64,000 nt of DNA from Ostrea edulis (Eukaryota): assembly GCF_947568905.1 (NCBI RefSeq), contig NC_079168.1, forward strand, positions 68,324,001 to 68,388,000, written 5' to 3'. Made by a program: the position numbers and the translations under genes. A model generated the notes under the pieces. The model saw nothing but the letters and a program-made list of their open reading frames with translations, made no database searches and was not told the origin of the DNA. This document shows, piece after piece, positions 41,999 to 55,842 of this stretch; positions within the stretch are counted from its first letter, which is position 1; each line of letters starts with the position of its first letter.

Positions 41999-42381
41999 TT
42001 ACACTTCAAATAGAAGTACTCCGAAAAACATTGATTGACCACCATCGACTGTTCCATATTTACGTTCAACAGATACCTTATCGCCAGAAGATAACTGGAG
42101 AACAGATAGAGCGGAACTGTCGTCATAACCATTATTACGTCCGTCCGATCTCGTTTCAAATTTATCAATTCCGTTAACGTTCAATGCAGCGCGTACAATT
42201 TCACTTTGAGCCTCTATGTTGTACAGAAACACGTATACTCCATCACGATCTGCAGTAAATATCCCAGTGGTAGTTGAGTAACCATGGTGATATCCAGAAT
42301 GTGTTGAACCAAAGACGACCGGCGTTCCGGAAAAATCTCCACTTAGAGAAGCGAGGAATGCTGGGTACGTGGACTTGGATA
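41999..42381 (-). CDS. Gene B last exon: third C1q domain, with stop
   Basis: Phase-1 acceptor gatattgtag|TA TCC AAG. Open reading YPAFLASLSGDFSGTPVVF..SMFFGVLLFEV*, a close paralog of 13052-13437. Confidence 0.9.
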
Positions 42382-42497
42382 CTACAATATCACATTTGTA
42401 TTATACAGATATATCAACGCTAATTTGTTTCTATGACGAAAGCTCAAAATTATGTCGTTGAATACTTATGTGTTGTCATGTTGAAAGGTGAAGATAT

Positions 42498-44311
42498 CTA
42501 AGAAAGCCCAGAAGGCTCATTCGAGATTCGAAATTCAAAATACGAGATTCAAAATTCAGAATACGAGATTCGTATTTCGAAATTCAAAATCCAAATTAAC
42601 CAATCAAAATGTAGGTCACAATAGATTAAAGGGTGGAGAGTACATTCATATAAACTTAAAATATGACAGAAAGCTTATTCTTCTATTAGAGAGATGAGAT
42701 GGACTGGGAATTCATACATTTGAGAGAAATTATTGCCACCCAAAAAAATTTATCAAAAGGGGGGGGGGGGGTAGTAATATCTATACTTCAGGTGCCTGTG
42801 AATGATAGAGGAAATTCGAACCATGAATAATTATTTCTCTCATCTATGTTGTCTCTTTTTATATTTGTTTTATGTTTCACAGGAAGCTTAACTACGTCGT
42901 CATTAGTCATTACCACAGAACACTAATTTATCCACGTTTTAAGAAAATAGCTTGTCCCATTGATTCATATTTGTACATTTATATTCTATGTTCGAGTATA
43001 TGTATAATCTCAGGAACCGGTAATTTTGTCCGTAAGAGTACGTTATACTATATCACCCCCTAAAAATATTAGGAGGTGATATAGTATAGACCCCTAGTAT
43101 TATTATATTACAGACAAAATTACCAGTTCCTGTGGTATGTCATTCTCTCACCAGAGGGCGCGTTACGCAAGCTTCACATACACCTCTGTCAACGCTTGGA
43201 ATCACGTGACAATATAATCACATGATATAAGCAATCATTCTCGGTTTCCTTTCCCTTTAAAAGTTCAGGCAACAGGTGATACTTCAGGCTCTTTTCATAG
43301 CCAGTTGAAACTTGAATAAGTGCATATTTACCATTTAGCTGTTTGTCTCTTATTTTACAAGTTTTATCGTAATTTTAGAGCCTTTCTTACTTTTGATTCC
43401 ATGTTTACATTTAAATCTCCACCACGTGTATATCCTACATTCATACGCATATTACGAAGCAGTTCCAAATTTATGATCAGAAAACGGCGATTTTAAACAA
43501 TTTACACTAAGCATCAATTTGATTACACCAAAAACATATCAAAATATAACTAAATATTTAGTCCAAAACATAAATGTTGGATCAAAGAAACTTTTACAAG
43601 ATTTCTGTAAAAATCCGTTGACAGAGGTATAGTGCGAGGAGCGCACGGAACTCTGGATAGAGAATGGTGGTACGTAGGCTGATATAATATGAATCAGTGC
43701 ATAGGATCATTTTTAAAACGTGTATAGATTAGTATACTGCCGTTATCATGCACGTAGTTCAGCTTCCTGGAGTCTAAAAATGTTTTTAAAAAAGACACAA
43801 CATAGATCCAAGATAAATATATATTCATTGTTCGAATTTCATCCATTGTTTATATACATGGTATAGATAACTGAAAAAAAAAATCAAACTAGAATCAATT
43901 GTTGGAAGGGTATCATCGGTTAATAAGCTTCATATACGATTTCACTTTAAGGTATATCACAATGTCTATTCGTCATTACTTGACCTGGTTATCACATACA
44001 GTGCAGAGTTAATATGCGGGAGTTGAAACAAGTTTTCTGTCTGCCTCCTTTACCGCTTTCTACGTGCCTGTCTGCATCCTAAGCATACATCAAAACATTT
44101 ATAGTTTTAGAAGAAATGTTTCGCTGTTTGGTAAACATATTAGAAGAAAAAGCTTTCTATCATATTTTAAGTTTACATGTATATGCATGTACCCTATATT
44201 CTAACTTTTAATCTATTGTTACCTACATTTTGATTGGTTAATTTGGATTTTGAATTTCGAATCTCGTATTTTGAATTTCGAATCTCGAATGAGCCTTCTG
44301 GGCTTTCGTAG
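42498..44311. mobile_element. 1.8-kb non-autonomous TIR DNA element nested in a Naiad tail
   Basis: Long TIRs cta(a/c)gaaagcccagaaggctcattcgag..aaccaatcaaaatgtaggt and 4-bp TSD ATAT at 42494-42497 and 44312-44315. The flanks rejoin as gaaggtgaagatatcgaacagtgatc. Confidence 0.8.
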
Positions 44312-44315
44312 ATAT

Positions 44316-44995
44316 CGAACAGTGATCAATCTCATAAATCCTATAAACAATACAAAATAGATAGTTGGGCAAACACGGATCCCTGGACCCACCAGAAGTG
44401 GGACCAGGTGGCTAGGAGGAGTAAGCATCCCCTGTCGACCGGTCACACCCGCCGTGAGCCCTATATCTTGATCAGGTAAACGGAGTTATCCGTAGTCAAA
44501 ATCAGTGTACCAAGAACGACCTTACAATCGGTATGAAACATGTCAGACAGCATTTGACCCAATGATAGGTTGTATTGACGAACTAGATCGTTATAACGAC
44601 CATAGAATTTGCAGAATGTTGACTTTAATCGAGACTGTTGAAACCCTGTACCATCAACTTGTCTGTCAGTAGCTTGCTTGGATTTAAAAACTGACTATAC
44701 GCAGAACAAGGTCTTGCGTATCGAATCAGTTTAGATATATAAACACCATATGCAGGTGATAATGGAATATTGCTACATAAATATGGGAAGTTGACGATGG
44801 AGAAGCTGAAATCATCCCGTTTGTCATACAGTTGAGTTGTCAGTTTGCCGTTAATGTCTACTTTCAATAAAATATCTAAGTATGAAGCAAAAGTGGACGA
44901 CTCTGTGGTGTCTTTTATTTCGAGCTCACAGAGATATATCGAATCGACATATCAATGAAAGTTATTAATAGACAAAACGTCGTCGATATATCTAA
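44316..44995 (-). mobile_element. Naiad-like RT end plus tail in the gene B last intron
   Basis: KVDINGKLTTQLYDKRDDF..YARPCS reading, followed by the tail. Confidence 0.85.
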
Positions 44996-45784
44996 ATCTA
45001 AATGTTACAATACCTGGTAATTCCAGGTTGCTGATATTTTCCTGTAAGTCGTCAGAATTTTAATAAACCAAAAGACGCTGCATAACACAGTAATTGTGCT
45101 GAACTTGTAGATAAATTAAAGAACAGTTATACTGTAGTTATGTGTACATTATAGAAAAATGATACCATATAAATAAAAAATAACTTTCACACAACTCTGA
45201 ACTTTAACAAATTGTCAACGCAGTTTTCCATCTTAATAAAAAATGAAATGAAAAATAGAATTAAGCGTATGAAAGAGCTAGGTCAATTTGAATCCTTGTA
45301 TCGATGCAACGTATATCATGATAACTGTGCTGCTCCATATTTAAGGTTTCTCTTTGTGACACGCTCTTTATATAAGGTTCAAGCAGTACTCTTTCATTTA
45401 ATTGTACTTGTGACTGTTAATCTACTAAGAACAGACGATTTTGTTGTTGGCATATTTTTCGGAATTTTCTATTGAACTTCTGCTTAGATTTAATTTCTTT
45501 TGAATTAAAGGATAAAAAGAAAATCGCTCTTTAGTACCTTCCTGAGTTTTCATGGGGTATATTTCATCTTGAATTATATGACCAGCAGTTTGCCTATCGT
45601 AGTACTTAGAATTTCAAAGAAAGCCCGGTTCTAAAAATATTCTTTTAATGTTCACATCGAAATCTGGTGAAGGTACATGTATCTCGACAAGCATTTTGTG
45701 AACATCAGAGTATCGCACGTTTTGCACTTACGAAACTCTTCACGTGTTTCAGTTTTGCTTATGCGCCCTTCATTTTAAGTTATA

Positions 45785-45853
<69 letters not shown>

Positions 45854-46103
45854 CATTGTAAACAACATATACATGAAATTGTATGTAAAATTCAAACAAA
45901 TAAGCCATGTGTCTTGTATGGTACGTCAACTTCTTAACATTATTGCCAAAGTGTTTTAGATTTTCCTTCCTCCCTTTTTGCGAAGTAATAATGTCTATTT
46001 AGAATATAGTTGTTTTGTCAATTTCGGGATCCCAGATTAAAGGTTTGCAAATACTTGCCAGTGTTATATTTAATGAGACTAAAATAGAATACTTAGTAAT
46101 TAC

Positions 46104-54725: not shown

Positions 54726-54774
54726 GATCATCACTGAAGAGACATTATTTGTCGAAATGCGCATCTGGTGCATC
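54726..54774 (+). ncRNA. Minimal type I hammerhead ribozyme inside a retrozyme-like insert (54634-54800)
   Basis: catca CTGAAGA gaca-ttatt-tgtc GAAA tgcgca TC tggtg. Confidence 0.8.
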
Positions 54775-55224
54775 AAAATTGGTACCGTATAAGTTTTACA
54801 TGAAGATTGTTTCGGGTGATCACGATTACTGCGGCGAATAGATCAGTAGAACATTTGATTTGTGATGTGGAGGTCGTGAACTCAAATATTGACCACATAA
54901 GTCCAGAGAATATCAAACAAGGAAGTTCAGACAATATTCAAACTACTGATTTGTAACGTAACGCTTGGTATTTGGTGAAGTTTCTGTGGTATATCGAGAA
55001 TCTTTTGAATGAGAAAAAAATCGCAGTCGTTTGCACGATTCAGAACCACATTGTCTAGGACAGAGTTCATGTGCCTATCTTTGTAACCTCGCTCAATTAA
55101 ACCTCCTGCTGTTGACATCTTGTACAACCGATCGACCGACCGATCTATTAGTATCCATCCCACCATTCACAAACTCACCCATATATCTGTCTATCTACGT
55201 ACCAAATAATCTATCAAAAAAGTG

Positions 55225-55450
55225 AAGATAACGAACAGTGATCGATGGAAAGGTGAAGATACGGAACAATGATCAATCTCTTAACTCCCATAAAGGATGA
55301 AAAATGGAGAACCCTAGAACATACCAGAGGTGGGATCAGGTGCCTAGGAGGAGTAATACTCACCTGTCGACAACATCTCATAAATCCTATAAAGAATACA
55401 TAATTGAGAGTAGGACAAACACGGACTCCCAGAAACACAAGAGGTGGCAT
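55225..55450 (-). mobile_element. Two partial Naiad-like tails
   Basis: gtgaagataacgaacagtgatc and cagaggtgggatcaggtgcctaggaggagtaa motifs. Confidence 0.7.
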
Positions 55451-55606
55451 CAGATGTCAAAGGACCTTTTCGTCTCTTTTACAAATTAGAACTGATAATT
55501 GCACATCTTAAACTGCATTTGATCTTGATTTTTCCTTTGGATGCAATGATAAGTTTTGCAAGTCGGAACTTTAGATTGTGGAAGCTTTATCTGAATGAAG
55601 ACCAAC

Positions 55607-55678
55607 CTTTTGTGGATAACATCCAGTCCAATAACCAATATCGCCATTATCTGCTCGGTACTGCTGCACTGCACACAC
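55607..55678 (-). CDS. LU-like module 1, exon b
   Basis: Acceptor ctgacag|GTG TGT and donor AAG|gttggt; phase 0-0; reading VCAVQQYRADNGDIGYWTGCYPQK. Confidence 0.78.
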
Positions 55679-55765
55679 CTGTCAGAATAAATTGAATTAC
55701 TAAGCTTCTTCAGATAACTGTACAAGTTAATGTTGTTATTAAGTATTGAACATAATATATGTTAC

Positions 55766-55842
55766 CTCTCCATTTTGACAGCGCTCAATTTTATTACACA
55801 GCCGAGGTTCAGTAATATCGGAACATCTCAGACATGTTAAAC
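55766..55842 (-). CDS. LU-like module 1, exon a
   Basis: Acceptor ttttatcag|GT TTA ACA and donor GAG|gtaaca; phase 1-0; reading LTCLRCSDITEPRLCNKIERCQNGE. Confidence 0.8.

What the first reader, a model, noticed from the sequence alone, without database searches (positions are those of the whole stretch)
41999..55842. Putative LU(Ly6/uPAR-like) x2 - C1q x3 protein missed by the ORF track
Seen: six short exons with canonical splice sites form two modules with the same three-exon phase pattern (1-0, 0-0, 0-1). Each has CxxC..C..C..C..C..C..CxxCC-x4-CN, and both carry basic KR/RRR sites in the last loop. Established: CxxC at the start and CCxxxxCN at the end typify LU/three-finger domains. Inference: fusion to tandem C1q heads is an architecture I do not recognise. 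The basic sites may be convertase cleavage points within a disulfide-held module. The signal-peptide exon was not found.
Basis: partly seen in the sequence, partly recalled or inferred. Interest (0 to 1): 0.7.

Follow-up and report, generated by a model that had tools for sequence, protein, structure and literature searches.

The report
Oyster Ly6/uPAR–triple-C1q mosaic gene
This is a real, intact flat-oyster gene, already in RefSeq as an unnamed protein, that joins two Ly6/uPAR-type cysteine modules to three C1q domains; the C1q part probably folds into a complete "C1q head" from a single chain, and I found no paper describing the combination.

Summary
On the minus strand, nine exons with canonical AG/GT sites give two three-exon cysteine modules (phases 1-0, 0-0, 0-1) and three single-exon C1q domains (each phase 1-1). 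It lies in two mini-exons, 56972-56957 and 56869-56828.

The 11-exon splice gives 586 aa, identical to RefSeq XP_048732014.1, "uncharacterized protein LOC125648968 [Ostrea edulis]". The gene was missed only by a prokaryote-style ORF list.

The same layout recurs at six other loci on three chromosomes of this genome. It is also annotated in Magallana, Crassostrea virginica and Saccostrea.

The LU assignment holds at sequence level: a 12-Cys framework, Toxin_TOLIP above Pfam's cut-off, and UPAR_LY6 above cut-off in the Saccostrea orthologue. The LU fold prediction was too poor to judge.

A confident model of a paralogue's C1q x3 part superposes on engineered single-chain C1q, cerebellin and adiponectin trimers (TM 0.84-0.89). 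The same C1q x3 cassette (69-77% identical) follows PAN-sushi, MAM or coiled-coil heads in other genes, which points to exon shuffling.

No RNA reads could be obtained. Convertase cleavage remains untested. The scan's own note s1-301836, on this same window, records the shared C1q x3 tail; I found no such note on other DNA.

The parts
56957..56972 (-). Coding exon 1: ATG plus 5 codons plus 1 base (MKNVP-), phase-1 GTAAGT donor. The 5' UTR extent is unknown.
   Evidence: Part of the splice that equals P0169. Three paralogues have the same two-exon signal layout.
56828..56869 (-). Coding exon 2: rest of the signal peptide (LLLYCASVIGRCVL-G). It follows an 87-nt intron and ends in phase 1.
55766..55842 (-). 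LU1 exon a (LTCLRCSDITEPRLCNKIERCQNGE), phase 1-0.
55607..55678 (-). LU1 exon b (VCAVQQYRADNGDIGYWTGCYPQK), phase 0-0; it encodes the Cys5-Cys6 segment of the module.
54110..54236 (-). LU1 exon c, phase 0-1. It carries the NRT sequon, the KR site and CxxCCxxxxCNxxxC.
53895..53989 (-). LU2 exon a (YPDTRGPICFDCEDVADPTDCHTITPCDLNQ), phase 1-0.
53494..53562 (-). LU2 exon b (KCLIHERNVFEQKYFTSKCEPRL), phase 0-0.
53280..53409 (-). LU2 exon c, phase 0-1. It carries the conserved GRRR motif, CxxCCxxxxCNxxC and a short Ser/Pro linker.
   Evidence: Toxin_TOLIP and UPAR_LY6 hits cover residues 121-197 of P0169.
47306..53279 (-). 5,974-nt intron between LU2 and C1q1. It is full of tandem repeats (107-bp, 181-bp and others). 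No alternative first exon was detectable.
   Evidence: tblastn of the N-termini of coiled-coil, MAM and PAN relatives gave no hit here.
46928..47305 (-). C1q domain 1, a single exon, phase 1-1.
   Evidence: Pfam C1q, E 4.7e-18. Splice sites.
46104..46475 (-). C1q domain 2, a single exon, phase 1-1.
   Evidence: Pfam C1q, E 6.8e-9..
41999..42381 (-). C1q domain 3, the last coding exon, starting in phase 1. Stop TAA at 42001-41999.
   Evidence: Pfam C1q gives three stretches, 136 bits, on P0169.

Best explanation
Window 56972-41999 (minus strand) is one intact protein-coding gene of the European flat oyster, LOC125648968. It encodes a 586-aa secreted mosaic protein.

The layout is a 20-residue signal peptide (two mini-exons), two Ly6/uPAR-type 12-cysteine modules (three exons each), a short linker, and three tandem C1q domains (one exon each). 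Every module is bounded by phase-1 introns, so the gene looks assembled by exon shuffling.

Shown: the exon structure, its identity to the RefSeq model, conservation of the architecture, purifying selection, and a predicted single-chain trimer in a paralogue.

Inferred: the three C1q domains pack within one chain into a pseudo-trimeric gC1q head. The protein would then need no collagen or coiled-coil stalk to trimerise. That head is the variable ligand-recognition part, as in bivalve C1qDC pattern-recognition lectins. The slower-evolving LU-LU pair is a protein-interaction or effector arm that couples recognition to a partner on haemocytes or in haemolymph.

The conserved basic loop motifs (KR in LU1, G-[RK]-[RK]-R in LU2) are functional sites. 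Either ligand contacts or dibasic processing sites would fit.
For: Gene structure:
- Eleven exons with canonical splice sites give an open 586-aa ORF identical to XP_048732014.1.
- The order SP-LU1abc-LU2abc-C1q x2-3 on one strand recurs at C5:68.31, 68.44 and 68.46 Mb, at C6:1.53 Mb, and twice at C9:44.0 Mb. Exon identities are 33-100%. A second C6 locus at 1.55 Mb showed the six LU exons in the stretch fetched, and RefSeq models it as the full 612-aa protein P0152.
- RefSeq and UniProt models with the same layout exist in O. edulis, Magallana gigas and M. angulata, C. virginica, and Saccostrea echinata and S. cucullata.
- The C1q1 exon starts in phase 1 with no Met or signal peptide. No other first exon was found in the 6-kb intron.

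Selection and conservation:
- dN/dS against tandem paralogues is 0.11-0.13 for the LU exons and 0.23-0.27 for the C1q exons.
- LU-LU is 79-81% identical to the Saccostrea and Magallana orthologues, against 66-69% for C1q x3.

Domains:
- Pfam on P0169: C1q 136 bits in three stretches; Toxin_TOLIP 24.0, above its 21.2 cut-off.
- The AlphaFold model of C1q x3 of paralogue P0004 (window exons in its alignment) has pLDDT 86 and pTM 0.90.
- Its best Foldseek matches are engineered single-chain trimers: C1q head 5HZF (TM 0.89), Cbln1 5KCA (0.88) and adiponectin 4DOU (0.84).
- Three-C1q proteins of bivalves bind LPS and PGN (PMC10672478). smultiC1q is a recognised class (PMC6835236).
Against: There is no direct RNA evidence for the LU2c-to-C1q1 splice in this gene.

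P0169's 90% cluster holds only the genome-derived model. The one transcript-like Logan contig of the Saccostrea orthologue covers C1q x3 and ends in intron-like sequence upstream of C1q1.

The single-chain trimer was modelled on a paralogue that is only 30-35% identical in C1q x3, not on this protein. The LU fold model was unusable (pLDDT 46).

The function is inferred from family knowledge only. UPAR_LY6 itself scores below Pfam's cut-off on this protein (22.9 against 24.8).
Confidence: 0.82

Rival explanations
1. There are two transcription units, and gene predictors merge them. One is a small secreted LU-LU protein (signal plus two LU modules, about 220 aa, ending by read-through of the 53280 donor). 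The other is a separate C1q x3 gene.
For: Read-through of the LU2c donor meets a stop after 11 codons (...PTVPGTQLSHNAQR*), so an LU-LU-only isoform is possible. Stand-alone mollusc two-LU proteins of 210-240 aa are the nearest language-model clusters. The closest relatives of the C1q x3 cassette occur with other N-termini. The Saccostrea Logan contig carries intron-like sequence, not LU2c, upstream of C1q1. No RNA reads were obtained.
Against: C1q1 begins in phase 1, with no initiator Met or signal peptide of its own. No first exon like those of coiled-coil, MAM or PAN relatives lies in the intron. LU-to-C1q order, strand and phase are kept in paralogues on three chromosomes, with introns from about 0.65 to 10 kb. 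Two annotation pipelines (NCBI, and Ensembl via UniProt) join them in six species. A C1q x3 protein without a signal peptide would be odd for this secreted family.
Confidence: 0.08
2. The locus is a recently duplicated, unexpressed or decaying copy in a tandem cluster. The conserved architecture would reflect only its expressed paralogues.
For: It sits in a cluster of four LU-LU-C1q x3 copies on C5. No transcript-derived protein clusters with it. A 3.1-kb minisatellite starts about 360 bp upstream of the start codon.
Against: The 586-aa ORF is intact and all 20 splice sites are canonical. dS of about 0.5 with dN of 0.05-0.10 against its nearest paralogues means long-standing purifying selection on both parts. 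All 24 LU cysteines and the basic motifs are kept.
Confidence: 0.06
3. The cysteine modules are not LU/three-finger domains. They are another small disulfide-rich fold, such as an EGF-like or other toxin-like knot, that happens to share CxxC and CCxxxxCN.
For: UPAR_LY6 is below Pfam's gathering score on this protein (19.9-22.9 against 24.8). The AlphaFold model is low-confidence, with no significant Foldseek match. There are 12 rather than 10 cysteines, and three exons rather than two per module.
Against: Every weak or significant hit belongs to one superfamily and spans the whole model: UPAR_LY6 2-81/82, Toxin_TOLIP 3-72/72 above cut-off, CD59, LYPD6-type, Activin_recp, BAMBI. The PDB profile hits are SLURP-1, PSCA, LYPD6, GPIHBP1 and TGFBR2 only. 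Orthologue P0166 passes the UPAR_LY6 cut-off. The ten canonical Cys positions and the terminal Asn align.
Confidence: 0.04

Closest known systems
Bivalve smultiC1q proteins (C1qDC proteins with several C1q domains, e.g. CfC1qDC-2 of Chlamys farreri and HcC1qDC5 of Hyriopsis cumingii; class defined in PMC6835236, reviewed in PMC10672478)
   Same: Both are secreted, lack a collagen stalk, and usually carry three tandem C1q domains. The genes sit in tandem clusters. The domains bind microbial patterns in the cases tested.
   Different: The described members have only a signal peptide, with or without a coiled coil, before the C1q domains. This one has two Ly6/uPAR modules. Neither paper mentions Ly6 or uPAR.
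Engineered single-chain gC1q trimers (human C1q head 5HZF/5HKJ, Cbln1 5KCA, adiponectin 4DOU)
   Same: Three C1q jelly-rolls in one chain fold as one trimeric head. The paralogue model superposes with TM 0.84-0.89 over about 400 columns.
   Different: Those are laboratory constructs made by linking separate chains. Here the arrangement is natural, exon-encoded and under selection. It was shown on a paralogue model only.
Multi-LU proteins of vertebrates (uPAR, C4.4A/LYPD3, CD177, TEX101; review PMC6600238)
   Same: Tandem LU modules follow a signal peptide, each module is bounded by phase-1 introns, and the CCxxxxCN end and plesiotypic cysteines are present.
   Different: The vertebrate proteins are GPI-anchored and contain LU domains only. 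Each LU is split into two exons at the tip of loop 2, and the first LU lacks the 7-8 disulfide. Here both modules keep all ten canonical Cys plus an extra pair, each is split into three exons by phase-0 introns before Cys5 and before Cys7, and the C-terminus is a C1q x3 head with no GPI signal.
SUEL/C1q mosaic genes of Crassostrea virginica (PMC6835236)
   Same: Both are oyster C1qDC genes in which another extracellular recognition module has been joined to C1q.
   Different: The partner domain differs (a rhamnose-binding lectin). They are not reported with three C1q domains or LU modules.
Sister genes with the same C1q x3 cassette: PAN-sushi-C1q x3 (LOC125650984, window 13052-21199), coiled-coil-C1q x3 (LOC125673044), MAM-C1q x3 (Logan P0167)
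   Same: The C1q x3 tail is 69-77% identical, with the same exon layout in the copy in this window.
   Different: The N-terminal modules are unrelated. This marks the LU-LU pair as one of several interchangeable heads.

Membership tests
C1q domain-containing proteins (Pfam PF00386), smultiC1q class | C1q domain(s) above Pfam's gathering score | tested here: met
   P0169 scores 136 bits in three stretches against a cut-off of 23.7. The single exons give E 4.7e-18, 6.8e-9 and 1.2e-3.
C1q domain-containing proteins (Pfam PF00386), smultiC1q class | Jelly-roll domains assembling as a trimeric gC1q head | tested here: met
   Tested on paralogue P0004's C1q x3 with the window exons in the alignment: pLDDT 86, pTM 0.90. 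Foldseek TM is 0.89 to single-chain C1q 5HZF.
C1q domain-containing proteins (Pfam PF00386), smultiC1q class | N-terminal signal peptide (secreted) | tested here: met
   By inspection only; no predictor was available. The peptide is MKNVPLLLYCASVIGRCVLG: a basic n-region, a 12-residue hydrophobic core, and V/G at -3/-1. The same two-exon layout is found in three paralogues.
Ly6/uPAR (LU) / three-finger superfamily | Ten plesiotypic cysteines, with CxxC near the N-terminus and CCxxxxCN at the end | tested here: met
   Both modules have them. Spacing is 2,8,5,5,16-17,5,18-22,(2),0,4, plus one extra Cys pair. They align to SLURP-1 and PSCA.
Ly6/uPAR (LU) / three-finger superfamily | A Pfam model of the clan above its gathering score | tested here: met
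   On LU2, Toxin_TOLIP scores 24.0-24.5 against 21.2. UPAR_LY6 scores only 19.9-22.9 against 24.8 on this protein, but 27.3 on orthologue P0166. LU1 alone stays below both cut-offs.
Ly6/uPAR (LU) / three-finger superfamily | Three-finger beta-sheet fold | tested here: inconclusive
   The AlphaFold model of paralogue LU-LU, built from 12 sequences, has pLDDT 46. Foldseek found nothing with E below 1.
Ly6/uPAR (LU) / three-finger superfamily | Exon set flanked by phase-1 introns (PMC6600238) | tested here: met
   Both modules are phase 1-1 overall. The internal split is three exons rather than the usual two.
Ly6/uPAR (LU) / three-finger superfamily | Occurs alone or with other LU domains only; GPI-anchored or small and secreted (a typical feature, per PMC6600238) | tested here: not met
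   It is fused to three C1q domains. The C-terminus is ...FFGVLLFEV, a C1q end with no GPI signal. This concerns architecture, not the fold.
Proprotein-convertase substrates | R-X-[K/R]-R furin consensus | tested here: not met
   LU2 has V-G-R-R-R|D with Gly at P4. LU1 has T-T-K-R|S. These are dibasic or tribasic only. The motif G-[RK]-[RK]-R is conserved in all three subfamilies.
Proprotein-convertase substrates | Actual cleavage of the mature protein | not testable with these tools
   This needs protein chemistry.

The most novel reading that the evidence does not exclude
Oysters may run a modular family of natural single-chain C1q heads. In it, one fast-evolving C1q x3 recognition cassette, kept similar within each species by gene conversion or repeated swapping, is plugged by phase-1 exon shuffling onto interchangeable effector arms: LU-LU, PAN-sushi, MAM or coiled coil. 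On this reading the LU-LU arm is a genuinely mobile Ly6/uPAR module. It would act as a CD59/uPAR-like adaptor to a haemocyte receptor or proto-complement component, and would be activated by dibasic cleavage inside disulfide-held loop 3.
Probability: 0.2. Interest if true: 0.7.

Novelty: new variant of a known kind. Interest (0 to 1): 0.5.

Why it matters
[quoted passage not shown] This oyster family is a conserved, selected counter-example. In it, an LU-LU pair bounded by phase-1 introns is joined to a different module type.

It also gives bivalve immunology a concrete case of a natural single-chain gC1q head. One gene can encode all three faces of the recognition trimer, and no collagen or coiled-coil stalk is needed. 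That would explain why the same C1q x3 cassette can sit behind four unrelated N-terminal arms.

The family is easy to test: express it, map its ligands, and look for haemocyte partners. C1qDC surveys probably file such genes under "multi-C1q" or "other", because the LU modules score near or below Pfam's cut-offs.

Tried and rejected

Signal exon. A strict ATG-plus-hydrophobic scan found nothing. blastn of the upstream region against paralogues found only a repeat-like block at 62703-62474. A loose scan was too noisy. The exon pair was finally found by analogy with the P0004 locus.

LU exons singly against Pfam gave no hits, being too short.

LU-LU AlphaFold model: pLDDT 46, with no significant Foldseek match. 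I draw no fold verdict from it.

Transcript contigs. The Logan members of the orthologue clusters are last-exon fragments. The 1,237-bp Saccostrea contig does not reach LU2c.

Literature. No paper holds C1qDC together with Ly6 or uPAR terms, or any of six LOC identifiers.

An independent first exon for C1q x3 in the 6-kb intron was considered and rejected.

The joined spliced model was never typed into a search or fold tool. It was built only inside scripts from window.fa, for the frame check and for comparison with stored proteins. All later searches used the identical database protein P0169, or single exons by reference.

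
Full report
**What is in the sequence**

The feature lies on the minus strand. Reading 56000-53150, 47700-45950 and 42900-41700 gives nine exons, each with an AG acceptor and a GT donor.
- LU1a 55842-55766, LU1b 55678-55607, LU1c 54236-54110
- LU2a 53989-53895, LU2b 53562-53494, LU2c 53409-53280
- C1q1 47305-46928, C1q2 46475-46104, C1q3 42381-41999 (stop TAA)

Each module has 12 cysteines with almost the same spacing, and each carries a basic site in its last loop: TTKRS in LU1 and GRRRD in LU2. 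Pfam finds C1q in all three large exons. The window has no N runs, and I met nothing that looked human.

**The missing signal peptide**

The first scans failed. The N-terminus of a paralogue's protein model (P0004) is split over two mini-exons at its own locus. The same layout is present 980 nt upstream of LU1a in the window.
- Exon 1, 56972-56957: ATG AAA AAC GTA CCT C, then a GTAAGT donor.
- An 87-nt intron follows.
- Exon 2, 56869-56828, ends in phase 1.

Together they encode MKNVPLLLYCASVIGRCVL(G), directly followed by LTCLRC. Three paralogues have the same two-exon arrangement.

**Identity of the gene**

The genome is Ostrea edulis.

The 11-exon splice was built only inside a script from window.fa. 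It gives 586 aa, identical at every residue to P0169, which is XP_048732014.1, "uncharacterized protein LOC125648968 [Ostrea edulis]". I did not type the joined model into any search or fold tool. After this match, searches used P0169 or single exons by reference.

**Is the LU-C1q junction real?**

I could get no direct RNA evidence. The indirect evidence is strong.

- Paralogues. tblastn of the exon peptides finds the same order and strand (LU1abc, LU2abc, then C1q x2-3) at three other C5 loci, one C6 locus and two C9 loci. Exon identities range from 33% to 100%, and the LU2c-C1q1 introns run from about 0.65 to 10 kb. A second C6 locus showed the six LU exons within the stretch I fetched, and RefSeq models it as a full 612-aa protein (P0152).
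- Other species. Proteins with this layout are annotated by NCBI, and by Ensembl/UniProt, in Magallana gigas, M. angulata, Crassostrea virginica, Saccostrea echinata and S. cucullata.
- No separate start. C1q1 opens in phase 1 without a Met or a signal peptide. The N-termini of coiled-coil, MAM and PAN relatives have no match in the 6-kb intron.
- Selection. dN/dS against the two nearest tandem paralogues is 0.11-0.13 for the LU exons and 0.23-0.27 for the C1q exons, at dS of about 0.5.

One caveat remains. A 1,237-bp Logan contig of the Saccostrea orthologue has C1q1-3 spliced together, but carries intron-like sequence ending in TTTTGCAG upstream of C1q1. It neither shows nor excludes the junction. 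Read-through of the LU2c donor would stop after 11 codons, so an LU-LU-only isoform is conceivable.

**Are the cysteine modules LU domains?**

- On P0169, Toxin_TOLIP scores 24.0 bits (cut-off 21.2) over residues 121-197. UPAR_LY6 scores 22.9 (cut-off 24.8), with stretches in both modules.
- The S. cucullata orthologue P0166 passes UPAR_LY6 with 27.3 bits.
- Modules from six homologues give only clan members: UPAR_LY6, Toxin_TOLIP, CD59, Activin_recp and BAMBI, each matched end to end.
- A module profile hits only LU proteins in the PDB: SLURP-1 (E 0.012), PSCA, LYPD6, GPIHBP1 and TGFBR2.
- Language-model neighbours are mollusc UPAR/Ly6 clusters of 210-240 aa. All ten best named hits fall in the same clan, though scores under 0.9 are a lead only.
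- The AlphaFold model of LU-LU was poor, with pLDDT 46 from 12 sequences. It gave no significant Foldseek hit, so the fold itself is not shown.

These modules differ from vertebrate LU genes as described in PMC6600238. Each has three exons instead of two, with introns before Cys5 and before Cys7. Each has an extra Cys pair bracketing CCxxxxCN. The first module retains the 7-8 cysteines.

**The C1q x3 part**

I modelled C1q x3 of paralogue P0004, with the window's three exons in the alignment. The model has pLDDT 86 and pTM 0.90. Its top Foldseek matches are engineered single-chain trimers.
- C1q head 5HZF/5HKJ, TM 0.88-0.89
- Cbln1 5KCA, TM 0.88
- Adiponectin 4DOU, TM 0.84
- APRIL-BAFF-BAFF 4ZCH, TM 0.83

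Ordinary single C1q chains cover only a third of the model. The inference is that the three domains form one head within a single chain. The window protein's short inter-domain linkers (about 5-10 residues) are compatible with this.

**Exon shuffling**

The window gene's C1q x3 cassette compares as follows.

| Compared protein | N-terminal part | C1q x3 identity |
|---|---|---|
| P0172 (window 13052-21199) | PAN-sushi | 77% |
| P0171 | coiled coil | 76% |
| P0167 (Logan transcript) | MAM | 69% |
| C6- and C9-type proteins | LU-LU | 30-35% |

Its LU-LU part, by contrast, is 45-55% identical to the C6- and C9-type proteins and 79-81% identical to its Saccostrea and Magallana orthologues.

In a maximum-likelihood tree, the young cassette clade (support 100/100) splits by genus rather than by N-terminal type. 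Either gene conversion or repeated cassette replacement could produce that pattern. I did not distinguish between them.

**Comparison with what is known**

The C1qDC literature recognises smultiC1q proteins, "three in most cases", and SUEL/C1q mosaics. The papers I read do not mention Ly6 or uPAR. No paper in the library pairs C1qDC with LU terms or cites these loci.

[quoted passage not shown] This family is a counter-example. A further M. gigas protein combines UPAR_LY6 with an IgGFc-binding domain (P0200).

**Basic sites**

KR (or KKR) in LU1 loop 3 and G-[RK]-[RK]-R in LU2 loop 3 are kept in all three subfamilies and in all species seen. They therefore matter. With Gly at P4 they are not canonical furin sites. 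Dibasic processing and an anionic-ligand contact are both open.

**Verdict**

The gene is already annotated, though unnamed, and I found no description of the domain combination in the literature I could search. I rate it a new variant of a known kind, of moderate interest. Earlier scan notes on this same window (s1-301836, s1-302172) describe the shared C1q x3 tail and the PAN-sushi neighbour. My results agree with both.

Noticed in passing
window 2-367 (+): This is the last C1q exon of another LU-LU-C1q x3 paralogue, on the plus strand. Its LU exons lie just before the window, at G000:C5:68313833-68317119. The target gene is therefore one of four such copies within about 170 kb.
   Followed up: partly
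Its C1q x3 tail is 77% identical to the target's, while its N-terminus is unrelated.
   Followed up: partly
window 57334-60482 and 61101-62190: Two minisatellites with 20-bp units, of 157 and 54 copies. The first begins only about 360 bp upstream of the gene's start codon. They explain the strong GC and AT skew there.
   Followed up: no
window 47980-48301, 48727-49301, 52512-52795: Tandem repeats (107-bp, 181-bp, 51-bp and shorter units sharing GGCACACAG/TGCGGCA motifs) sit at both ends of the 6-kb LU2-C1q1 intron. They produce long Cys-rich pseudo-ORFs on both strands.
   Followed up: no
window 62474-62703 (-): A repeat-like block, 78% identical to sequence upstream of the C5:68.44 Mb paralogue. 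Its translation contains stops. It is probably a dispersed element, not an exon.
   Followed up: partly
tree of C1q x3 cassettes (proteins P0169, P0170, P0171, P0172, P0166, P0202 and others): Cassettes cluster by genus (Ostrea, Saccostrea, Magallana) and not by N-terminal module, although the LU-LU heads are orthologous across genera. This suggests concerted evolution or repeated cassette swapping.
   Followed up: partly
P0200 (M. gigas XP_065936049.1, 775 aa): The precomputed Pfam entries list UPAR_LY6 together with the IgGFc-binding N-terminal domain. This is a second kind of LU mosaic in oysters.
   Followed up: no
L035 (Logan contig of SRR26159589, 1,237 bp): In the Saccostrea orthologue, C1q1-3 are spliced together, but 78 nt of AT-rich sequence ending in TTTTGCAG precede C1q1. 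This could be intron retention or an assembly branch point.
   Followed up: partly
G000:C6:1536900-1538100 (intron between LU1c and LU2a of LOC125648058): About 15 tandem copies of a segment resembling the end of exon LU1c (CC..CN region, 75-95% identical at protein level) lie in the intron of the C6 paralogue.
   Followed up: no
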